64,000 nucleotides of DNA, from contig OZ037769.1 in NCBI GenBank assembly GCA_964035545.1, forward strand, positions 9,136,129 to 9,200,128. The letters are read 5' to 3'. A model generated the notes under the pieces. It made no database searches, had not been told where the DNA came from, and worked only from the letters and a program-made list of their open reading frames with translations. This document shows positions 3,888 through 21,720 of the stretch, piece after piece. The translations under genes were made by a program, and so were the position numbers. The first letter of the stretch is position 1. Each line of letters opens with the position of its first letter. The DNA is from Bugula neritina (Eukaryota > Animalia > Bryozoa).

Positions 3888-4830
3888 ACTGATGGTAATA
3901 ATGTACTAAGGAAAATTACTGCCAGTCAAGACTTCATGCTAACCTTCAAGTGGTAACCGCTGGTACATTAGAACTCACCGGGCCAATAGCATTGAGCATC
4001 TATGGAATTATGACCCTAAAAAAGGTCATCTAGACATGGGACAATTTGTGAGAGTGCAACAGGTACCTGGTGCCTGTTACCTACATAGCCAGCCCCTACA
4101 ATCACATAACTTCTAGACTCGTCCTGGGCAATCTTTGCCAGCTCAGGTTACTTCTGTAGCGGAGAGGGGTGTGTTAGCAGCTGACAAACTTGATTTGTAC
4201 TTGAACAAATTTGTCAGCAAAAAGGTCCAAAATAAAATTAACCTGAGATTTTCATCATGAAACATCAGAAGTATGCCCAAATGAAGGAGCACAAAAATAT
4301 AATTGAAACTTTCATTACACGACATCAACATAGCTGCTCTGAGTGGGGTCAGATCCTCAGAAACTGGTTACACCAGAAAAGAAACAGGTTATTTCATATA
4401 TTGGAGTGAGAAATTGCAGATTGCAGTGGATCTGGAGTAGATTTGGCCATCAAAACTGAACTAATTTCAAAACTGATAGACAGGCTAGCCACAAAATTAT
4501 GACCCTTCGAGTCTTTGTCTGATAATAGATGGTGCACTGTGATAGCTGTCTATGCTCCAACAATGACAGTCAAGAAAACATCAATCAATTTAACAATAAG
4601 CTGAACAAGACGCTAAATTCAGTTCCTGCTGATTTCAAGGCCAGAGAGAGCCAAGGCTATTCCACCTAGCTTGGTGTGATGAGAAATTATGGCTGTGGGA
4701 AGCTCAACATGAACTAGGAATTCTATCTTTAAAGTGCACTGAATATCAACTCAGCATCACCAACGCTTTCTTGCAACACAGCTCAGCCCATAAATATACA
4801 TAGATGCACTTGAAAAGCAAACATTCGTGC
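3888..4830 (+). mobile_element. Decayed 5' fragment (5'UTR plus endonuclease) of the same RTE-type LINE family as 14533-18003
   Basis: Direct similarity to the 14.5-kb copy (CAGTCAAGACTTCAT.CTAACCT.CAAG; GGAGAGGGGTG; GATGGTGCACTGTGATAGCTGTCTATGCTCC). Confidence 0.85.
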
Positions 4831-6241: not shown

Positions 6242-7710
6242 TGTAGTGTTTGTGTAACAATCACCCACTTGTTATTGTTGTTTACTATAACTTGTTTGTA
6301 ACAACAGGATATAACAGGAAATAACATTCCTTGATATTGTTTCATAATAATGTATGATTGTACACCACCTATATATAAATTTTTTGGTTTATAGAATAAA
6401 ACAGTTCATGTTATAACAGTACTGCTGCATTGTGTCTACTGTAATAGAACCACGTGCATTGTATAGAACGGAAATAATATATACAAAATACATATATAAA
6501 ATTGGCGACAAGGATGTTTTAAAATTTTAACTTTTGTATTACGACTATACAACATGGCTAGTTCATCAGTACCGTCATTGTCTGAAAGAGTGGACGTGTT
6601 CCTAGAGCGCCTAGGTAGTTACTTTGCAGTACAAAAAGTCAAGGCCGAGGCGATGGTGCGTGTGCTAATTCTGGGTCTAAGTGAGAAGCAGTATTCACTA
6701 GTTAGAGACCATGTAACTCCAAGAATTTCTTCAGAGATGAGTTACGAGGATGTGGTGAATATTTTGAAGGGACACTTCAACAGACTGACAGAGAGGACAA
6801 TTCTGAGAGATCAGAAAGTCCAACGGTGAGTCTGTCAGTGACTTTGTGGCTAGATTAAAGAGTGTTTCAAGATATTGTGAGTTTAATAAGAATCTCAATG
6901 AAAACTTGGTGGAGCAGTTTCGCATGGAAATAAATGACAGCTTAATAAGGGAAAAGCTAATTAACATGCCACTTGCTCAGCAAGAAGATTTTGAGGAAGT
7001 GATAAGGAAGGCTCAAGAAGTAGAATTAAATAGAAAGAGGAGTGACCTCTCTATGAACGACCAACCAGCAGTACAAGCATTACAACGCAGAAGTAACATG
7101 AAACCGCCATTATTTCAGCGTCCTGTTCATACAGCAAATAATGACAGAAAATGCTTCAGATGCGGCAAGGCAGACCACATGGCTAATGACCGTGCATGTC
7201 CAGCAAGAGACAAGAAATGCCGAGTATGTCACAAACTGGGACATTCTGCTAAAAGCAAGTTCTGCAAAGGTGTACTGGTAGTTCGCAATGTGATTAAAGA
7301 AGCTGATCAATCACTGCAAATATCAAGGCCGGGAGACGAGGATGCAGCATTCTACAACTTCAAACTAAGCAGCAATATAACACTTCCTAAGTGCAATGCC
7401 AGCATCGAAGGTGAAACAATTGAATTCATTGTGGACACTGGTGCTTGCGACAACGTTGTATCTACAGCTACATACCACAAGATTGCTAAGAAGGTGGAAT
7501 TATTGCCAACTGACAAACAGCTTTATGGCTATGGCACAGAGAGTAAGTTGAACCTACTGGGCTATTTTAAAGCTAACATTTCTGTAAATAGAAAGTTAGT
7601 TACGAGCAGATTTTATGTCTTTAATGGTAGTGCCAGATGTTTGATGAGTTGTAACACTGCATGCAAACTAGGTATTCCATCTATTACTAGCAGTTTGATT
7701 TCTAAGGAAA
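6242..7710 (+). mobile_element. 5' part of a Gypsy element: LTR (about 6242-6492), PBS 6503-6516, frameshifted gag-zinc knuckle-protease
   Basis: TGTAGTGT...CA LTR with AATAAA; PBS TGGCGACAAGGATG (tRNA-Ser(GCU)-like); two CCHC knuckles (CFRCGKADH, CRVCHKLGH); protease FIVDTGA. Confidence 0.8.
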
Positions 7711-8940
7711 GTGACTAAGGGCACAAACCACTACATAGACGATAGTTGGGTAGATGAAAGTGTGGTTTCAACCAATAAAGCGCGGAGACACCTGACGATG
7801 TATGAGCTTGAAACAAAAGATCCAGTAGCACTTGGTGAATCAAGAGTTTTGGGGCTTAAAGTCACCAAGGAGCAAGATGGGCATCACAAATAGAGAGATG
7901 GAGTGCTATAAACATTTTATGTTTCACCAACAAAACGGCAGCGGTTCTCTGTTTTTGGTATACTAGCTAAGACTTGCATGCAATTCCCTAAGAAGTCAGA
8001 CTAATGATGCAGGCTGGGCTAAACCTATACCAGGAAATGTTTATATGTTTCCTCATGAAATCATTAGCAAGCCATCTAAGAATGATACAGTAACTGGTAA
8101 ATGGAATGTCAACACTTCATCTGATGGTGTGGCATGGTATGATGTTAGTAATTTGGCAATTTGATATTGTACTGAGATGAAAAGCAATGTTATAAAAAAT
8201 GAAACATGGCTCAGAAAAGATGATGGCTCACGCATAGACATTGTAACATTAGAAAATGTCATTAATGTATTAAAATGGTTCTTCGGTGAGGAATAACTGA
8301 ACTCTGTGTGGAAACTGATTATGCTGGTGGGTATAGTTGGATGGACTCAGTATTGGAGAGTTCTAAAAGGCAAAAGGTGTTTGGTTCAAATGAAATGGTT
8401 GTCAAAAGAAGGTTAGTAATAATAGCTCAGTTGGTTGATCAATACGATGTATGAGTGCAACCATTCAACCAGTGCCTTCTGCGTATAACGAGGCTGCTTT
8501 GTTAAACAGAGTTTCACCGAAATGGCACCGGAGTCTTTTCATGGCTATGGTGACACGACATAGTACACTAAAGGCGAAAGTGAAGCAGTTATATGGCAAG
8601 AATTTTCTTGGTGTAAAGAGAACCATGTATGTTGTAGAAAAATGCAAACCTCAGCTGAAAAGCAGTTTGTTTAAGATACGAGTCATTCATGTAGCTCATG
8701 CAAACAGATATACTCACTACCACTGAGTTGAAAGCGTAGATGTGAATAGTAATTGGCATAGGGTGACAGTAGATATAGCCTATGTAGGAGGGAAACCATA
8801 TTTCACATTAGTAAACGGTGATCTCAGTAGATTCGTCATATGAGTAGCATTGAGCAATGAAACTGCAGGGTATGTAATCTAATTTTTGTAATTTTCTCAA
8901 GCAGGACCCACCTAATGAAGTATTGTGACAATAGGTCAAG
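7711..8940 (+). mobile_element. Decayed Gypsy-like RT/RNase H/integrase fragment
   Basis: HYIDD RT motif, RVLGL, and integrase-like WHRVTVDI near 8755. Confidence 0.6.
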
Positions 8941-8949
8941 CTTAAAAAT

Positions 8950-11594
8950 AGCAAAACAAAAAATTTTGGAAAATGTGACACAAATGAGGAGCTGCAACTG
9001 GCACTTTATTTTGAACAGTAGATTGTTGCCACCAACACAGTTTTCAAGCACAGGCAGCATCATAAAGCTACCTAGTTGCACCTTCATTCTAAACATTGGC
9101 CCCTTACGGATAATATGATTACAAGATAGAAAGATCAGAGTGATGTGCTGGATGCCAGAAAAACCATGGTCAGGTCCAAGTTAGCTTTTGCACTAAGAAA
9201 AGCAAAAAAACAAGAGGCAATTTATCTTAAAAGCTGAATGTGGGAAAACCACAAAATGAGGGTGTGTTGCAAGAGTTTCATAAACAAAGAGATAAGGCAA
9301 TGGTATACAAAAACGATAACAGTGTAACCGTAGAAGAAAGATGGGACAGCTTAAAAATCTCAACTCTCAACACAGCTGCCAAAGTCCTAGCTAGGGCAGA
9401 AAGAAAACATCAAGATTGGTTTGAGGAAAATAATTCGAAACTGAATGCATTGCTTGATGAATAAAACAAGCTTAAATCACCAGCACTACAAAGGAGAACA
9501 AGAAGTAGCACTGATTGACTAGCACAAGCACAAAGCAAGTTGCAAAATGTAGTCAAGAAAAAAATTATTAATGGTAGGAAAAAAGCAAAAGCACTTCAAC
9601 AGGCGGCTGGAAAAACCAACATGAAGGCATTCTATAACGGCTTCAGAGAAGTGTGCGAGCCACATAATATACTCTTGTGTATGCCGAGAGAGTGAATATA
9701 GAGAAGCAAGGACTAGTTTTACTTCAAAAAACCTGGAAAATGGCTCTTGTACACAGTTCTAAAAATATGATCAGGGACTACAGGAGGTGTACGGGCCCGT
9801 TAAGCGAGGAACAACCCAGCTAAGAGCTTTAGATGGCAATATAGTACTGCAGGAGAAGTCAGAAATTCTCAACAGAGTTGCTGACCACTTTGCTCAACTC
9901 CTGAATATACCTGGTACTCTGGATGTAAGGGCTGCAATGGATATTAAAACAAGACCGGGGGTACACTGTCTCTTTGAGCCCCCCCCCCCCCCAGACGTGT
10001 GGGAAATGATAGATGCTATTGACGATACAAGAGAAGGTAAAGCACCTGAGAAGTGTGGAATTCCATCAGAAATATGAAAACATGGAGGAGCAGAAATTTT
10101 GTCTAAACTGCACCAGCTGATTCTTTCTGTTTGGAGGGAGGAAAGGGTACCCCAAGACTGGAAAGATGCTAGCATCATCTCGATATTCAAGAAAGGCAGC
10201 CGAAGAGATTGTGGAAACTACGGAGGAATATCCTTGCTCTCTATTGCTGGAAAGATACTCTCACGAATTCTGCTGAACAGGATTAACATGCATGTTGCTT
10301 CAGCTGTGTTACCAGAATTTCAGTGTGGCCTCAGGAGCGGTAAAGGTACCATGGACATGATCTTCTGTTTGAGACAAACACGGGAAAAGTGTATAGAGCA
10401 AAACATGCCACTTTATGCTGTGTTCATTGACTTCACTAAGGCCTTTGACACTGTATCAAGAGATGGCCTCTGGCAAGTTCTCACTAAGTTCGGATGCTCT
10501 GCCAAATTTGTGAACATTGTCAAATCTCTACATAGTGGTATGCAAGCTCCTGTGGCATATGAAAATGATCATTCTAAAGAGTTTGCAGTGACAAACGGTG
10601 TTAAACGAGGGTGTTTTCTTGCACCTACCCCCTTTTCTCTCTATCTGTCGGTCATGCTAGAGGTTGCCTTTAAGGGCAGCTTAGATGGAGTATCTATGTA
10701 AACAAGACAAATGCAGACCTCTTCAAAATAGCTCATTTTAAATCAAAAACAAAAACATCTCAGAAGATCGTAAGAGAAATGCTATTTGCCGATGACAGTG
10801 ATCTGGTAGCCAATGGTGCACAGAGTATACAGCAGCTAGTAGATAGATTCTTCTTGGCTGCTAAATAGTTCAACTTAAAGATAAATATCAAAAAGACAGA
10901 GTGCCTATACCAACCAATTAAAAACCAATAGGTAGTGCAGCCTCCTGGTGATATTATAGTATATAATGAAGCTCTAGTGCAGACAAAAAACTTTATATAT
11001 CTTGGAAGCACAATATCTGACGATGCCAGGCTGAACGGCGAACTGATCTCCAGGATGGGAAAAGTTAGTGCAGCCTATGGGAAGCTGAGAGAGAGACTGT
11101 GGGACAACCACCATGTGTCCCTTCGAGTGAAATGCCAAGTATACACGACGATAGTTTTATCTACCTTGCTGTGTGGGACCGAGACATGGACAGTTTACAG
11201 GACACATGTCAAGAAGCTAAATTCATATATGAGGAGGCATTTGAGAAAAATTATGAAGCTAACTTGGAAAAATAAAGTTTCAAACCCTGAAATATACAGA
11301 AGAAGTGGTTTAGCTCCAATGGCAGATATGCTCATTGAGCGAAATCTGAGATGGACTGGTCATGAAAAGAAACTACCTAGGCAGCTGATCTACTCCCAAC
11401 TGAGTTCAGGGAAAAGGAATCAGGGCCGTCCTAGTCTCAGATTCAAATATGTAGTGAAGAGCAACTTAAACTGGAGAGGCATTAGACAGGATATTTGGTT
11501 GGCTGCAGCTAACCGTCGACCTATCTGGATTACTATGTTTCATAGACCTAAACCTAGAACAGACATCGTCGACTCGACAAACTGCTTATAATGA
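8950..11594 (+). mobile_element. 5'-truncated degenerate RTE-type LINE (part of APE endonuclease plus RT)
   Basis: HQDWFEEN, VPQDWKDA, GISLL, FIDFTKAFD, GVKRG, LFADD, FIYLGS, NLRWTGH, GRPSLRF; ends with TAA TGA like the 14.5-kb copy. Confidence 0.9.
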
Positions 11595-12330
11595 GGGATA
11601 CTGCCAGGGACACAGTGTGGCTTTTGCAACAGCAGGAACACTATTGACTTGGTATTTAGATAGCATCAAATTCAAGAGAAATGTGCTGAACAGAACATGA
11701 AGCTATATGTTGCATTCATAGACTTTGCAAAATCCTTTGATACAGTATTGAAAAATGACTTCTGGAATGTACTGAAAAAGTTTGGCTTAACTGAGAAAGT
11801 CAAGGTAATGCAAGGTAGAGACTCCTCATGCGAGTTTGCAGTAAGCAATGGTGTCAAGCAGGGGTGTGCTTTTATACCCATACTATTTTCATTATACCTC
11901 AATGCTACGCAAAAAGTGACATTTAAAAATGTAAATGAAGATATTTATACTCAAACTCGACATGGGGCTGATCTTGTTAAGTGGGTCAATTCAAGTCCAA
12001 AACTCGTGCTACCAACCACCAAGCAAGAAAGTTGCTGTTTGCCAACGACGATGCTTCCGTAGCACTATTGGAGAACTGTGTAAAAATGGCGACTCAGTTC
12101 AGCTTAAAAATCAACATTAGGAAGACAGAATGCATGTACAAACCTATCACTCATTCACCCTCTACCGGAACCTGGAGTTATCATGACAAACAAGGAACTA
12201 TTTGTACTTGCCACAGACTTTACCTATCTAGGAAGTACTGTTTCGAGCATTACTCAACAAGTACCAGCCAAGAAACTCAACCGTCACACTGTGAGAACTT
12301 GACATCAAGTTTAATAGTTATAAGAGCCAC
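11595..12330 (+). mobile_element. Additional internal RT fragment of an RTE-type LINE
   Basis: QCGF, FIDFAKSFD, GVKQG, LLFAND, FTYLGS across frameshifts. Confidence 0.8.
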
Positions 12331-14532
12331 TCTACAAAAAAATGAAAAAAAAATTAGATCTTCATTTCAGGGCTTACGAGTCTACAGAAAATTTTCTGTG
12401 TAGATTAATTGATGAGGGTAACAATTTAAATATGTTAGATCGTGGCTCAACACTTAGTATGATAGCTGAGACTTTTGACATTGGTGTAGGTAGCCTTGAA
12501 TTAGGTTCCATTCTAATGCCAAAACTGTCTGGTAGGTGTAAAAACCCACAAACTATAGAAGAGTTGTTCTCCTTATGCTATAAGCACAGTGTGGACAGCC
12601 CAAGTAGGGAACTATCTAAATGCCATATCTGCGCCAAAAGTAGGTCCAGAGTGCAGATCGGCAGATGAAGAATTGGACATCCAGACCCATGACTCCAGTT
12701 TCTACACCCTAGAGCCTGCCAGATACACCCAGTACCACAGCCCAACAATGTAGATATCTGCAACCTTGGACGATACCACTGAGACAGAAGGTATGAATCC
12801 CAACTGTCCATCGGCACCGCCATGTTCAGCTACCAGAAAGAAAATCCCTACTACTAGTAACATCTCACCAGAAGAGGAGACAGCTGCAAGCCCTGATCAG
12901 GATGTAATGACTGTCACACCTAACCTTCACTCAAGCTTGAAAGCCTCTGATAAGGTATTGGATGTGCGCATTCATCCTCTGGCAGCAGCTACATATCTTT
13001 TTTCTATAAATGCTTTTCTTCATACTGCAACACCTGGTGTACACCACTACAAACATCTATTCTGTAACCATTTTTCTTTTGAAACTGGATAAAGACATCT
13101 ATTTAAATGGCAGAGTCAAGTGTCAAACCCAGGGGCACAGCGGTGTGTTAGTTCTTAGAAATTATCAAGTAGTTTTTCCCAAGTTAAGTAAGCCCAAGCT
13201 TGGCTTATGTACCAAACATTTCTATAGGTTGGCCAATAAGCGTTTGAGATGTTTTTCAAAAGCTATTGTCAGATTTGACCCTTTTCCCCTTGGAAGTCTG
13301 CACAACACCAATAACTTAGCCTAATTACACACCTTCAGTAACTAGTATCACCTAGATAATTATCATACTTTAATTGCTAGCCCACTGCTGCATAATTGCC
13401 CATTATTTAGCCCAACTTAAGAGTTTGTAAATCTCTATATGAGTTTCTTTATAGTTCAGCCTATCGGCTGTTGAACACTTACATGCCATCACTACTCAAT
13501 TCATATGCATGCACCAACAATTTCATAAAATTACAGGGCTCGTCCAGAATGACGTTAAACTTCAATAGGCTACACAGTATACTTCCAAATAATATATAGA
13601 CCACTTTAATGAACTAAAACCCATAGTCCAACAGGCCACACACAATAATTTCTATAAAGCACGCCTCAAAACACAAACTGCCTTAAAACACAAACCCCTC
13701 GAAATGCAAACAAATCTCAATCGAAAAACAATTCTCATGGTGTCACGTCTCGCATAATTTATAACGTCATAACGACACATCAGTAGAGCAACATACACGT
13801 ACACACGTTGAAACACAAATGAAAATGGTACAGCAACACGCCTCGCATATATAAAACTTTATAACCGTAGATTGGCAGCATGCATAAACATGTACGGAAA
13901 CATGACAAAATACAAATAAGATAGGCTACTTTAATGAACTAAAACTTACAGTTCAATGGGCTACTTACAATTATTTTCATAAACCGCCAGATAACATTAA
14001 CTGTCACAGAACATAATCCAACTCAATACATAAACCGCCTCAAAAAATAAACCTTCCTGAAAAACAAAAAACCCAAATGATGTCATAGCGGTATATTGGC
14101 AGCAAATGCGCCTCACATACATGTACAACTTTATATCGGTAAACAGTGTATTAGGATAGTTAGGACAGTTTTATTAGCCTCACATTATAGCTTACTGTAG
14201 TCAAACAAAGCCACTTGTGGATGTTTTCATAATAATATGAATGTAGAGTTGGCTGCTTGGGGTCAAAGGTCTCCCAATTAATTTGTTACGCACAGTTGCT
14301 TTTGTTACCAGCAGTGCTTATGCAGTCAGCTATATTAGTTAGTAGCAACGTTATAATTAGTCTAGTTCATTATATATATCTAATATTTACTATATCAACG
14401 CATATACGCATCTACTATATCAAACATATCACTATCAATATGAATTTGCTGTGTCTCTGGACAACTTGTTTCGGTGTAGAAAGTTAAAATCGACTTCAAA
14501 GCAATAAATTTCGGTATCAATACCTCCATATA

Positions 14533-14711
14533 AGTGGTGGTGGATGGTGGAACCAAGAGCTGTACCAGTTTACACTACGGACTCCAGCATCCAAGGACTG
14601 ATGGCAATGATGTACTGTAGAGAAGTTCCCATCAGTCAAGACTTCATACTAACCTCCAAGCGGTCACCACTGGTAACTGGGTGTAGATACACCCAGGCTA
14701 ATAGTATGAGG
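14533..14711 (+). ncRNA. HDV-like self-cleaving ribozyme at the 5' end of the RTE element
   Basis: P1 AGTGGTG(14533-39)/CACCACT(14665-71); P2 CTTCATACTA(14642-51)/TAGTATGAGG(14702-11); P3 ACC/GGT with L3 TCCAAGC; P1.1 CC/GG(14672-73); P4 CTGGGTGT/ACACCCAG; J4/2 GCTAA with catalytic-position C14698. Confidence 0.85.
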
Positions 14712-14928
14712 ATCTATGGGTTGATCACCCAGACAACAATCCATCCAGAAACGTGACACTCTGAGAGGGCGAATTTACTCGGCCAGTCACTGCGACTACT
14801 GAACTGCTGTGCTCGTCCTGGACACTCCTTGCCAGCACAGCGTACTTTTTTAGTGGAGAGGGGTGCTTAAGCAACTGACAAAACCCTAAGTATCCTTAAA
14901 CTTCTTGTCAGCATAATCCGATTGAATC

Positions 14929-17900
14929 ATGAAAAGAAAAATGAACACGAAATCATACTGGCAGGACGTCGCCCAGGATAAAAAGGTCCAAATTTCTAAA
15001 CTCAACCTTGCATCATGGAACATACGAACAATGCTAGACCGGGAGAACACAGAAAGACCTGAGAGAAGAAGTGCAATCATTTCATCTGAACTACAGAAGT
15101 ATGGCATCGACATTGCAGCACTGAGTGAAATCAGATTCAAAGATACCGGTAACATTCGTGAAGAGTCAGGCTACACCATTTATTGGAGTGGCAAAACTGC
15201 ATCTGAGCGCAGTGAGTCAGGCGTGGCTCTTGCTATCAGGAACGAACTTGTTTCGAGACTAATCGAAGAGCCAAAGGCTATAAGCGACAGACTGATGTCA
15301 CTCAGGGTTCCTCTGTCTGATGAGCGATGGTGCACTGTGATAGCTGTCTATGCTCCCACGATGACAAACAGCCAAGAAAACATCAACAGATTCTATGACC
15401 AACTGAATCAGGCTCTAAGATCAGTCCCAGCAGCTGATAAGATCTTACTCATGGGGGACTTCAATGCTAGGGTTGGACAAGATCACTCAACCTGGCCCGG
15501 TGTGATAGGCAAGTATGGCTGCGGAAACCTGAACTCCAATGGTGAACTTCTGATCTCAGTCTGTAGTGAACATCAACTGTGCATTACCAACACCTTCTTC
15601 AAGCATAAACCAGCTCACAAGTTTTCTTGGATGCACCCGAGAAGCAAGAACTGGCATCTCATCGACTTTGTTATCACACGACAACGTGATCTACCAGACA
15701 TTCTGGACACAAGGGCGATGAGAGGGGCGAATTGCAGTACTGACCACATCATGATCAGGTCAAAAGCTAAGCTCAGAGTGAGGAGAAAAATGAAGAAAGG
15801 GAGAACACCTTGCCAGAAGCTGGACGTTTCTCGACTTAAGAATGAGGAAGTAAGACAAGAACTGGAAAAGTCCCTTGCTGGGAAACTGAACTCTGCTCCA
15901 GAGGGCGTAGAGAATAAGTGGAGAGCATTCAAAGAGATAGTTTATGCAGAGTCAAAAGTGCACCTCGGCACTGTCAGCAGGAAGCATGAGGACTGGTTTG
16001 ACGAGAATAATGATGAGCTTCAAGAACTCATCCAGAAGAGAAACAAGGCCAGAGCAGACATGTTAACCAGGAATACTCGCTCGAACAAGTCAAAGCTTAG
16101 AATGGCTGGCAAAAAACTCACAGGAAGATGCAGGGAGCTCAAGAACGACTGGTGGTTGACAAAAGCTGCTGAACTGCAACGGTTTGCTGACACTAACGAC
16201 ATGAAAGACTTTTACCAAAGCACGAAAACTGTTAGGGGTCCAAGAGTGAGTCATCCTGACCAGCTCTTGGCCAGTGACAGCTCAACACTCCTGACAGAAA
16301 AACAAGACCTTCTAGCGAGATGGACAGAGCATTTCAGCAAGCTACTAAACGAGACTCCAGATATTGATGACAACATCATTGAGAACCTGAGACAAGCTCC
16401 CATTCAGGACTAGATGGACGATTGCCCAGATATTGAAGAGATCATCAAGGCAACTTCGATGCTAAGTGAAGGGAAATCACCTGGCTCTGATGGTATTCAC
16501 CCTGAGGTTATCAAAAGGGGAGGGCCCAAACTAATAAGTACTCTCCATGAGATAATAAAGGAGGCATGGAAAACTGCTGTAGTCCCTCAAGATTGGAAAG
16601 ATGCCCAACTTATAACCATCTTCAAAAAGGGTGATCGGAAGCTGTGCGGTAACTACAGAGGTATCTCCCTTCTCTCAATTCCCGGTAAAGTTTTTGCTCG
16701 CGTCCTTCTAAATAGAATGACATCATATGCAGAAAACTTCCTACCCGAAACTCAGTGTGGATTCCGTAGTGGAAGGGGAACAGCAGACATGATATTTGCA
16801 CTGAAGCAGATACAGGAAAAATGCATCGAGCAAAATATGCCCCTGTACATGGTCTTCATTGACTTCACCAAAGCGTTCGATACTGTTGATCGGGCGACCC
16901 TGTGGAAGATCTTACAGAAACTCGGTTTTCCCAGTCACTTCACCAATCTTATCAGCGCTCTCCATACTGGCATGAAGGCCTCAGTCAAGCTGAAGGAGGA
17001 GTTATCTGAGTCGTTCCAGGTCAACAATGGTGTGAAACAAGGATGTGTGTTGGCTCCAACGCTATTCTCTATTTTCTTATCGGCTGTTCTACAGCACGCA
17101 TTTAAAAACTGTGATAAAGGCGTCTGGATTCAAAGTAGACCTGGAGCTGATCTGTTCAATGTGAACCAATACAAGTCAACAACAAGAACACAGAAAGTAT
17201 TGGTTAGAGAACTCATGTTTGCTGACGACACTGCCTTCGTTGCACACAGCCATGGCGATGCACAGGAATTAGTCGACAGATTCGCCAGAGCTTCCAAAGC
17301 TTTTGGTCTGAAGATCAACATCAAGAAAACGGCACCTGGAGCCCATGACAGTGGTGACAGTATCTGCATAGATAATGAAGACCTTGCCAACGTCAATAAG
17401 TTTAAATATCTTGGGTCTACAGTGATGTGCAACAACAAGATGGATGAAGAGATTCATACAAGGGTGTCCAATGCTTCAATCTCATTCGGCAGACTAAAGA
17501 CCAAAGTGTGGTACAATAAGGATCTGTCATTCAAGACCAAGTGTACAGTGTACAGAGCCATTGTCCTGTCCTCTCTGCTCTATGGAGCGGAGGCCTGGCC
17601 TGTATACAGGATAGCCGCTCACAAATTCAACACCTATATGATGAGACATCTACGCCAGATCTTGAACGTGAAGTGGTGGGATTTCATCTCGAATGAGGAG
17701 ACTCTAGCACAGGCAAATCTACTCAGCATGTATGAACTACTCATTCAAAAAAACCTGAGATGGGCTGGTCATGTGCATCGAATGGATAACTCTAGATTAC
17801 CTAAACAAATTCTCTATTCACAACTGAAAGAAGGCACCCGTGGTGTTGGCAGGCCGCGACTGAGATTCAAAGATACCGTTAAACGCAATCTAAAAGACCT

Positions 17901-18000
17901 GAAGATCCCTATTGGTAGCTGGCAATCTCTCAGCAAAGACAGATGTAAATGGAGGACCATGATTCACCGGAAGTCATCTTCGGACACGAAGGACAGCTAA
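14929..18000 (+). pseudogene. RTE ORF (APE endonuclease plus reverse transcriptase) with a single in-frame TAG at 16411-16413
   Basis: ORFs 14929-16413 and 16414-18000 are contiguous and in frame; motifs SWNIRT, ALSE, VYAPT, GDFNA, TDH, GVKQG, FADD, YLGS. Confidence 0.9.
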
Positions 18001-18799
18001 TGAACCTCCATATACCAGCACAGACAAGCAAAATACATAAATATATATATCGAAACACAATAAAACTACAGGCTTTACAAAATCACAATAGGTTTTATGA
18101 ATGCTTATTAATTAAATAACTATTTCATTAAAATAATATTTAGGTGTAAAGGAAAATCCCTTATATAACATGATTAGAACTTAGAAGTACTATATGTCCA
18201 CCTGAGGTTTTAATTAATAGTCTTATTAAATAGTGTTAGCGGCATCAAAAGAAAAAGTTTAGTAAACTCAGCATAGTCGAGCACTGTCTAGCACGAGACA
18301 TGGGAGCGCTTGAGACAGTACGGGTGATAACAGACATACCCTCTCTCCCCCTGTGTGCTGCAGCCACGTGTAGCAGTTTCCAGTTCCCACTCAGCCTATC
18401 TACGTGTATTTTGCTAATAGTTAATACTGCAGCCTACAATTTTATCTCTATGGTTACAGGAATAATTGCTATATAGAATAAATCTTCTTAATCCTAGGTA
18501 ACTTTTTGTGAGGTAAAAGGGCTATTTATAATTAAGCCTGTAATTAGATTTATATTAATGCATTCAGAGAGGTCTCATGCATATCTATCTCCTTAAACCA
18601 AAATAATGGTAAATGATGTTTCCCAAAACTGCTGTAAAAAAATTTGTCTCAATCTCTGGTAACTTCTATCAGATAAAAAAATTATGAGCGTTTCATTTAG
18701 AAATAAGCTTGTAATTACATTAAAATTGATGCACTCAAAGGTGTCTCATAAAATCTCATTAAATCAGATTATTGGTAGATGGGGTAAACATTTTCAAAA

Positions 18800-20510: not shown

Positions 20511-21720
20511 GATACTGAAGGACATGAATATACAAGAGGATCAGCAACTGTAGGACTAGGGTCGAGCTCTACAACCTTACGAGCAACAGAGACATGGCAC
20601 CTAACCACATTACCAATAGGACCAACGCAAGTCATATCTGTACTATAAACATCCACGACTCTGTATGACTCTGGGTGATACATAGTATCCAGCTTATTTT
20701 TAGTTTCACGTCTCAGCGGCACAGAATCACCTCGGCCTATAAGACTATCTTTAGAACCAACATCTGTTTGATCTTTCATCTTCTGCTTATACAAAGCATC
20801 ACTGTATCCTGCCTCCTCAGCAGTCTTAATAACCTCATTAGAGAGCATAGATAGTTTGGTTCGCATCTCACGACCGCGTATCATAGCATAAGGTGTCATA
20901 CATGTAGCCCCATGGGGTGTTGACTTGTGAGCAATAACAAATTCCAACAGAGCTTGCTCCAAGTTCCTACCCCCACAATTTGCAATCCTCAGCATCTTGA
21001 GAACAATTCTGTTAGTTGACCGTTAGCCTTGGGCCACAATGAAGTTGTAGATAGCCACTTGACACCATACTGCAAGATAACTCTGGAATTCACTGGAAAA
21101 AAACTGGGGACCATTATGTGACCTCAAAATCTCTGGGTAACCATACCGAGCAAAGACATGTTCAAGAAACGAGACAACCTTGCCTGTCTTAGTATTACTT
21201 AGAAAACCAGCCTTGAAGAGTCTACTGTAGTAATCTACGAAAATGATGATAAAACGACCAGCAGGAAGAGGACCAAGTAAATTAACACTACAGAACTTCC
21301 AAGGACTGCCTGGTAGCTTAGTGGAAGTGATAAGAGTAGGAGGAATACTAGAACCAACTAACTGACATGACAAGCACTGCCTACACAAGCTTCCGGCATA
21401 TCTGCTGATCCTGGGCCACCAAACCTTGAGGCTCAGTCTACTCTTGGTCTTTACGACACCTTGATATCCTTCATGAGCAAGAGATAAAACCCTGGACCTC
21501 AGACTCTGTGGAACAAATATTTGTTCACCTCTGAGAACTACACCGTTACAACTACTCATCTCATCTCTCAATGACCTAATCACAGCAGATACACTTATCC
21601 AATCACTTGACTGAATAGCTTTGTGTATAGCCGGAGTCTCCTCACAAGACTGAGTTGCATTCTGAATCACTGACCAGCTCATAGGACATGGGACAGCCAT
21701 GCTAGCAACTGTACATATTT
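20510..21720 (-). mobile_element. Gypsy integrase fragment on the minus strand
   Basis: AHEGYQG..KVWWP..C..C, VDYYSR, SHNGPQF, STPHGAT, GREMRTKL. Confidence 0.85.

What the first reader, a model, noticed from the sequence alone, without database searches (positions are those of the whole stretch)
14533..14711. Complete HDV-like self-cleaving ribozyme starting at the exact first base of a TSD-flanked RTE retrotransposon
Seen: every element of the nested double pseudoknot occurs in the canonical order. P1 AGTGGTG/CACCACT; 10-bp P2 CTTCATACTA/TAGTATGAGG; P3 ACC/GGT closing L3 TCCAAGC; P1.1 CC/GG; 8-bp P4 with AGAT loop; J4/2 GCTAA with C14698 at the catalytic C75-equivalent position. J1/2 is expanded to about 100 nt and holds two extra hairpins (14541-51/14583-93 and 14596-604/14629-37). 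P1 begins at 14533, the first base after the independently defined 5' TSD copy. An alternative register GGTGGTG at 14536 would give the canonical G-U first pair. Known: HDV-like ribozymes process the 5' ends of R2, L1Tc and some RTE elements out of host co-transcripts. Inference: this family has no internal promoter and is released from read-through RNA by self-cleavage; the two-hairpin J1/2 variant may be undescribed.
Basis: partly seen in the sequence, partly recalled or inferred. Interest (0 to 1): 0.85.

Follow-up and report, generated by a model that had tools for sequence, protein, structure and literature searches.

The report
HDV-like ribozyme heading an RTE retrotransposon
The first 179 bases of a 3.5-kb RTE-type jumping gene fold into a hepatitis-delta-type self-cutting RNA whose predicted cut is the element's first base; the fold is well supported, but it is a new example of a mechanism already known for this class of elements.

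Summary
Observation confirmed. The element (14533-18003) is flanked by a perfect 11-bp target-site duplication.

- **Chance:** my own HDV descriptor hits only this site in the 64-kb window and none in 100 dinucleotide shuffles.
- **5' ends:** ten near-identical copies in the genome have unrelated DNA upstream of the position equal to 14533. Seven start with G there, giving the canonical G-U first pair. The window copy and two others have A.
- **Covariation:** across about ten lineages (this genome plus ENA and metagenome contigs), P2 shows compensatory changes at 7-9 of its 10 pairs. L3, P3, P1.1 and the catalytic C stay fixed.
- **J1/2:** the roughly 100-nt region folds into two hairpins in every lineage folded.

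The mechanism (5' processing of a co-transcript) is already described for RTE, R2 and L1Tc elements. Long J1/2 loops are known in R2. The verdict is a new member of a known kind.

The window copy also carries a private premature stop in its ORF. No RNA or cleavage data could be obtained. The scan had already noted other copies of this family in the same genome.

The parts
14522..14532 (+). 5' copy of the 11-bp target-site duplication ACCTCCATATA
   Evidence: Identical 11-mer at 18004-18014
14533..14539 (+). P1 5' strand. The predicted cleavage is 5' of 14533. An alternative register lies at 14536-14542.
   Evidence: 7/7 pairs with 14665-71 in both registers. Ten copies diverge from each other upstream of this base.
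14540..14641 (+). J1/2, 102 nt: hairpin 1 at 14541-14593, linker, hairpin 2 at 14596-14637, and the invariant CAAGA at 14637-41
   Evidence: MFE folds. The same two-hairpin layout appears in each of the nine lineages whose J1/2 was folded.
14642..14651 (+). P2 5' strand
   Evidence: Pairs with 14702-11. Compensatory changes at 7-9 of 10 pairs.
14652..14664 (+). P3 (ACC/GGT) closing L3 TCCAAGC. C14656 and C14657 form P1.1.
   Evidence: P3 and the CC of L3 are near-invariant in 25 distinct sequences.
14665..14673 (+). P1 3' strand CACCACT (14665-71) and the P1.1 GG (14672-73)
14677..14696 (+). P4, 8 bp with an AGAT loop. Other lineages keep only the basal CTGG/CCAG.
14697..14701 (+). J4/2 GCTAA. 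C14698 sits at the catalytic C75-equivalent position.
   Evidence: This C is invariant in alignments A2 and A3. It was fixed by design in the metagenome pattern, so those hits say nothing independent about it.
14702..14711 (+). P2 3' strand; end of the ribozyme
14929..16413 (+). ORF part 1, the AP-endonuclease domain. It ends in a premature stop at 16411-13 that is private to this copy.
   Evidence: Pfam Exo_endo_phos and Exo_endo_phos_2. The 10 other copies that cover the site carry a sense codon there.
16414..18000 (+). ORF part 2, the reverse transcriptase. The stop lies 3 nt before the element's end.
   Evidence: Pfam RVT_1, 4e-34
18004..18014 (+). 3' copy of the target-site duplication

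Best explanation
Bases 14533-14711 encode an HDV-like self-cleaving ribozyme that is the 5' terminal module of a 3,471-bp RTE-type non-LTR retrotransposon. When the element is transcribed as part of a longer RNA, the nested double pseudoknot folds and the J4/2 cytosine (C14698) catalyses scission immediately 5' of P1. This releases an element RNA whose first nucleotide is the first base of P1. That RNA is the template for target-primed reverse transcription, so new copies start at that base. Shown here: the fold, its conservation and covariation, and the coincidence of copy 5' ends with the predicted cut. Inferred: catalysis itself and dependence on read-through transcription. The roughly 100-nt J1/2 forms two hairpins kept in all lineages, so it probably aids folding, protein binding or cap-independent translation (inference). 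The GGT-repeat 5' strand offers two or three equivalent P1 registers. This particular copy is probably no longer autonomous because of a private stop in its ORF. It has A-U instead of G-U at the cleavage-site pair in register 0.
For: Anatomy at the stated coordinates. The descriptor is unique in the window, with 0 hits in 100 shuffles. Rfam's best match is an HDV-like family, sub-threshold. 5' ends: 10 copies at about 99% identity share sequence from the base equal to 14533 and are unrelated upstream; 7 start with G, 3 with A. Covariation on an unfitted MAFFT alignment of 18 copies: 91.7% of cells paired against 33-46% when partners are slid; 52 both-side cells against 21.6+-3.9 in shuffles (0/500); P2 has 7 of 10 compensatory pairs. 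RNAalifold finds P2 independently. With 25 distinct cores, including other assemblies and metagenomes, P2 has 9 of 10 compensatory pairs while L3, P3 and P1.1 are near-invariant. A core pattern that left P1 free retrieved 15 metagenome contigs. Eleven of them have a perfect 7-bp P1 partner upstream, with six different P1 sequences in all. About 0.02 per contig is expected by chance; that figure is my estimate, not a tool result. The elements are RTE-like: APE+RT in one ORF, 3.47 kb, a 3-nt 3' UTR, a TSD, and homologues named craniofacial development protein 2. The mechanism is published for RTE, R2 and L1Tc (PMC3774820, PMC6765202).
Against: No Rfam family reaches its gathering score. P1 never covaries within this RTE family, since it is invariant GGTGGTG/CACCAC(T/C), so P1 support inside the family rests on conservation and on the 5'-end coincidence. 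The window copy has A-U rather than G-U at the cleavage-site pair. More distant RTE relatives (Nematostella and four other contigs) showed no ribozyme with my model or descriptor.
Confidence: 0.85

Rival explanations
1. The fold is real and selected, but its role is not cleavage. The 5' end would be set by transcription initiation at the element's first base, and the structure would serve as a translation or protein-binding element.
For: HDV-like ribozymes of retrotransposons are also proposed to act like an IRES and to bind the element's protein (PMC6765202). The J1/2 hairpins are conserved without any known catalytic role. No RNA data are available.
Against: The invariant residues are exactly the catalytic ones: the J4/2 C, the L3 UCC, P1.1, and a first P1 pair of G-U or G-C. 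The element's 5' end coincides with the first P1 nucleotide in about ten lineages. An initiation site has no reason to track P1.
Confidence: 0.07
2. The family ribozyme is or was active, but this window copy is a dead relic whose own ribozyme no longer cleaves efficiently.
For: The first base is A where 7 of 10 copies have G, so the wobble pair at the cleavage site is replaced by A-U in register 0. The ORF carries a private premature stop.
Against: Apart from base 1 and one J1/2 substitution that improves hairpin 1, the 179 nt are identical to the other copies. Register +3 (14536) still offers a perfect P1 with G-U.
Confidence: 0.15
3. Chance resemblance to the HDV fold within a structured 5' UTR.
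For: No Rfam gathering-score hit. The MFE z-score of the 179 nt is only -1.9.
Against: 0 descriptor hits in 100 window shuffles. There is strong compensatory variation. The same core with different complementary P1 and P2 occurs in unrelated contigs.
Confidence: 0.01

Closest known systems
HDV-like ribozymes of RTE and baggins non-LTR retrotransposons (Ruminski et al. 2011 J Biol Chem; drz-Agam families of Webb et al. 2009), known to me through PMC3774820 and PMC6765202
   Same: A nested double pseudoknot at the 5' end of a promoter-less APE+RT element, with cleavage at the 5' junction. The P3/L3 and J4/2 letters match the drz-agam-1 model (ACC-UCC..G.-GGU, CUAA).
   Different: It scores below the Rfam drz-agam-1 cut-off (23.1 against 37 bits). 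J1/2 is about 100 nt with two conserved hairpins. The P1 5' strand is a GGT repeat that gives alternative registers. I could not read the original paper, so I cannot say whether such J1/2 forms were shown there.
R2 retrotransposon HDV-like ribozyme (Eickbush and Eickbush 2010; PMC3774820)
   Same: 5' processing out of a co-transcript, a conserved P1.1/P3/L3 core, long J1/2 loops (216-498 nt in silkmoths, part of which is required for cleavage), and non-templated or variable bases at 5' junctions.
   Different: R2 is site-specific in 28S rDNA, uses a restriction-like endonuclease, and often cuts upstream in 28S sequence. This element has an AP endonuclease, inserts at dispersed sites with a TSD, and its P1 lies wholly within the element.
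Twister-variant ribozymes at the 5' end of Perere-3, an RTE-clade element of Schistosoma mansoni (PMC8501958)
   Same: The same element clade and the same logic: a 5' self-cleaving ribozyme in a single-ORF APE+RT element that inserts non-specifically with a TSD.
   Different: A different ribozyme class (twister, not HDV-like).
L1Tc HDV-like ribozyme of Trypanosoma cruzi (Sanchez-Luque et al. 2011, as cited in PMC6765202)
   Same: An HDV-like ribozyme in the first bases of a non-LTR element, releasing it from longer transcripts.
   Different: An L1-clade element in a protist. The core sequence is unrelated, as far as I know from memory.

Membership tests
HDV-like self-cleaving ribozymes | Nested double pseudoknot with P1, P2, P3, P1.1 and P4 in the canonical order | tested here: met
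   Direct reading. Descriptor hit, with 0 in 100 shuffles. 91.7% of cells paired across 18 copies.
HDV-like self-cleaving ribozymes | Catalytic cytosine in J4/2 (C75 equivalent) | tested here: met
   C14698 in GCTAA. The column is invariant in alignments A2 and A3.
HDV-like self-cleaving ribozymes | Two-base-pair P1.1 between the L3 CC and the GG after P1 | tested here: met
   C14656/57 with G14673/72. 23 of 25 distinct sequences keep C-G at each pair.
HDV-like self-cleaving ribozymes | G-U wobble (or G-C) closing P1 at the cleavage site | tested here: inconclusive
   The window copy has A-U in register 0 and G-U in register +3. Seven of 10 sister copies have G-U in register 0. Other lineages have G-U or G-C.
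HDV-like self-cleaving ribozymes | Helices supported by compensatory variation | tested here: met
   P2 has 7/10 compensatory pairs to 9/10. P1 is complementary with six different sequences among core-pattern hits. P3, P1.1 and basal P4 are conserved and do not covary.
HDV-like self-cleaving ribozymes | Divalent-metal-dependent self-scission 5' of P1, giving a 5'-OH | not testable with these tools
   The only evidence is indirect: copy 5' ends coincide with the predicted cut.
HDV-like self-cleaving ribozymes | Match to a curated Rfam HDV-like model at gathering score | tested here: not met
   RF01787 scores 23.1 bits against 37, and there is no hit at gathering score. The Rfam models are narrow and cannot span a 100-nt J1/2, so this lowers membership of those specific families, not of the ribozyme class.
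RTE clade of non-LTR retrotransposons | A single ORF with an N-terminal AP endonuclease and a reverse transcriptase, about 3.2-3.5 kb, a very short 3' UTR, no poly(A), and a TSD | tested here: met
   Pfam domains. The element is 3,471 bp, the stop lies 3 nt from its end, and the TSD is 11 bp. An intact 989-aa single ORF is present in the relative L098.
RTE clade of non-LTR retrotransposons | Phylogenetic placement of the RT within the RTE clade | not tested
   Indirect only. The best named homologues are craniofacial development protein 2 and endonuclease-reverse transcriptase entries. That the CFDP2 name derives from a BovB/RTE element is from my own knowledge.

The most novel reading that the evidence does not exclude
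The ribozyme may be a distinct RTE-specific architectural variant in which two accessory features are functional. First, a two-hairpin J1/2 domain is kept in every lineage despite near-complete sequence turnover, and could be a binding platform for the element's protein or the ribosome. Second, the GGT-repeat P1 5' strand has redundant registers that could buffer the element against 5' erosion. Copies with 2.7, 3, 4 and more than 15 repeats exist, and a copy shortened by 3 nt still forms a full P1.
Probability: 0.3. Interest if true: 0.55.

Novelty: new member of a known kind. Interest (0 to 1): 0.35.

Why it matters
It gives a clean, recently active example of ribozyme-defined 5' ends in an RTE family: about 99% identical copies, and intact ORFs in relatives. 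The natural lineages form a comparative series suited to asking what the long J1/2 domain does and how P1 register redundancy affects 5'-end maintenance. For genome annotation, the core model (R1) marks true full-length 5' ends of this family. It does not change the known picture of how such elements are processed.

Tried and rejected
- **Rfam:** nothing at gathering score. The other lineages gave only one further weak drz-agam-1 hit.
- **J1/2 covariation:** MAFFT plus RNAalifold on ten lineages gave no consensus pairs because the sequences are too diverged to align. Hairpin conservation therefore rests on independent folds only, with z from -0.9 to -4.2.
- **Distant relatives:** L081, L083 (Nematostella) and L085-L087 gave no ribozyme by model R1 or by my descriptor. 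These may be truncated copies, a different ribozyme, or none, so no conclusion is drawn.
- **Whole-genome model search:** it found only this family (26 sites), but only 150 of about 15,500 candidates were scored.
- **A14533 as an inherited variant:** rejected. The three copies with A fall in different sub-lineages, so the first base varies at the insertion junction.
- **Papers not held:** Ruminski 2011, Webb 2009 and Webb and Luptak 2011.
- **Rows left out:** the decayed copy L047 was left out of all alignments. L025, L032/L033, L015 and L026 were left out of some because of deletions or insertions.

Full report
**What is there.**
- P1 is 14533-39 paired with 14665-71.
- P2 is 14642-51 paired with 14702-11, 10 bp with one G-U.
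- P3 is ACC (14652-54) with GGT (14662-64), closing L3 TCCAAGC.
- P1.1 pairs C14656 and C14657 with G14673 and G14672.
- P4 is 14677-84 with 14689-96, with an AGAT loop.
- J4/2 is GCTAA, with C14698 at the catalytic position.

The pseudoknot-free MFE fold recovers P2, P4 and the two J1/2 hairpins at 14541-93 and 14596-637.

**The element.** Its ends are set independently by a perfect 11-bp duplication, ACCTCCATATA, at 14522-32 and 18004-14. The element is therefore 14533-18003, or 3,471 bp. It carries an AP-endonuclease ORF (14929-16413) and a reverse-transcriptase ORF (16414-18000). The two are separated only by a stop at 16411-13. That stop is private to this copy, since the ten other copies covering the site have a sense codon. 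The family ORF is therefore a single APE+RT reading frame that ends 3 nt before the element's end. This is the RTE layout. Named homologues are craniofacial development protein 2 and endonuclease-reverse transcriptase entries from many animals.

**More than chance.** Rfam has nothing at gathering score. In a permissive 351-nt search the best hit is the HDV-like family drz-agam-1, at 23.1 bits against a cut-off of 37 and E=0.017. It aligns P2, P3, L3, P4 and J4/2 exactly as proposed. A relaxed descriptor of my own required five things:
- P3, an L3 beginning TCC or TTC (T, then C or T, then C), and the P1.1 GG;
- a P4 of at least 4 bp;
- a C-N-R-A motif in J4/2;
- a P2 of at least 7 bp;
- a 7-bp P1 within 300 nt upstream.

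It hits only 14533 and 14536 in the 64-kb window on both strands. It hits nothing in 100 dinucleotide shuffles of the window.

**5' ends.** The genome holds 12 copies at about 99% identity.
- Ten share sequence from the base equal to 14533 onward and are unrelated upstream. Two are truncated by 14 and 19 nt.
- Seven of the ten start with G, so register 0 has the canonical G-U cleavage-site pair.
- The window copy, L002 and L009 have A. These three are not one sub-lineage.
- An A-like copy from another assembly has T at this base.

The first base therefore varies at the insertion junction, as is known for R2 5' junctions (PMC3774820). Because the 5' strand is a GGT repeat, registers 0 and +3 give the same P1. 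Copies exist with 2.7, 3, 4 and more than 15 repeats.

**Covariation.** Four further lineages in this genome (B to E, 66-76% identical in this region) carry the same module.
- On an unfitted MAFFT alignment of 18 copies, with the full pseudoknotted structure, 91.7% of cells pair. Slid partners give 33-46%.
- Cells with changes on both sides number 52, against 21.6+-3.9 in shuffles (0/500).
- P2 has compensatory changes at 7 of 10 pairs.
- RNAalifold finds P2 by itself and suggests an invariant 3-bp extension, AGA with TCT.

A core covariance model (R1) finds 26 sites in the genome, all in this family. That count is a lower bound.

**Relatives outside the genome.** Two relatives fetched through the protein carry the complete ribozyme with new P2 compensations: L082 at 58% amino-acid identity and L084 at 91%.

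A core DNA pattern that left P1 and P2 free retrieved 15 metagenome contigs.
- Six belong to this family. L098, for example, is a 3.6-kb contig with an intact 989-aa APE+RT ORF that is 62% identical.
- Four belong to another APE+RT family, with J1/2 of about 160-180 nt where it could be measured (L091 and L093).
- Three are compact ribozymes with other P1 sequences.
- The remaining two, L094 and L102, showed no P1 partner and were not classified.

Eleven of the 15 have a perfect 7-bp P1 partner upstream. About 0.02 per contig is expected by chance, which is my own estimate.

With 25 distinct cores, P2 has compensatory changes at 9 of 10 pairs. P3, the L3 CC and P1.1 are near-invariant. That alignment is fitted to the model, so it leans towards the structure. 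The unfitted alignment gives the same picture.

**J1/2.** In each of the nine lineages whose J1/2 was folded, the segment folded alone gives hairpin 1, a short AAGG-type linker, hairpin 2 and then the invariant CAAGA before P2. Shuffle z-scores, computed for six of these lineages, range from -0.9 to -4.2. Column-by-column covariation could not be shown because the sequences no longer align. The conservation is therefore of architecture only.

**Mechanism.**
- Shown: a conserved, covarying HDV-type fold whose first P1 base is the first base of the element in many independent insertions and lineages.
- Inferred: the element is transcribed within a longer RNA, the ribozyme cuts 5' of P1, and the released 5'-OH RNA is translated and reverse-transcribed.

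Fragments of an LTR-type gag, protease and RT lie 2-8 kb upstream on the same strand. That fits the published remark that such elements are read through from introns or upstream LTR elements (PMC6765202), but it proves nothing here. No RNA evidence was obtainable.

**Comparison and novelty.** HDV-like ribozymes at the 5' junction of RTE elements are published. Ruminski et al. 2011 is cited for exactly this in PMC3774820 and PMC6765202. Long J1/2 loops with a required sub-region are known for R2 (PMC3774820). RTE-clade Perere-3 uses a twister variant in the same role (PMC8501958). This is therefore a new member of a known kind. Two modestly interesting traits remain open: the conserved two-hairpin J1/2 and the repeat-based P1 registers.

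Earlier notes of this scan reached the same reading on other copies of the family. They are s1-442905 and s1-458017, the latter being the copy I call L004. I confirmed the reading independently.

Noticed in passing
window 3888-4188 (core at 3927-3996): A second, decayed and 5'-truncated copy of the same ribozyme and 5' UTR, from lineage D. It scores 76.5 bits with model R1 and has broken pairs in P1 and P4.
   Followed up: partly
window 14717-14731: A small hairpin just after the ribozyme, TGGGT...ACCCA. It recurs in other lineages as AGGG...CCCT, so its first pair appears to covary. Its function is unknown.
   Followed up: no
window 14639-14641 with 14713-14715: RNAalifold extends P2 by three invariant pairs, AGA with TCT, beyond a one-base bulge. 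The pairs never vary, so this is neither supported nor refuted.
   Followed up: partly
window 6846-12400, + strand: Fragments of an LTR-type retroelement lie upstream of the RTE on the same strand: zinc knuckle, aspartyl protease and RT. An integrase fragment lies on the minus strand at 21023-21700.
   Followed up: partly
L005 about 1900-1925; L060/L061: Two copies have an inverted duplicate of the element's own 5' end directly upstream, or an inverted J1/2 segment. This looks like the 5' inversions that twin priming produces.
   Followed up: no
L057 about 1800-1850; L009, L034 and L082 upstream flanks: One lineage-C copy is preceded by a long (TGG)n tract that continues the P1 repeat. Several copies are preceded by ATGA or AATG repeats resembling the element's 3' end (…CTAATGA). 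This hints at tandem insertion or microsatellite targets.
   Followed up: no
L099 2330-2481: A compact HDV-like ribozyme (P1 GTCTGAC with GTCAGAT) lies directly after a sequence that looks like a tRNA, by eye only, in a metagenome contig. It is reminiscent of phage theta-type ribozymes.
   Followed up: no
L091 and L093 (minus strand of each locus): A different APE+RT single-ORF family, 28% identical in the APE domain, carries the same ribozyme core. Its J1/2 is about 160-180 nt and begins AATGGTTGTGTGA, and its P1 sequences differ.
   Followed up: partly
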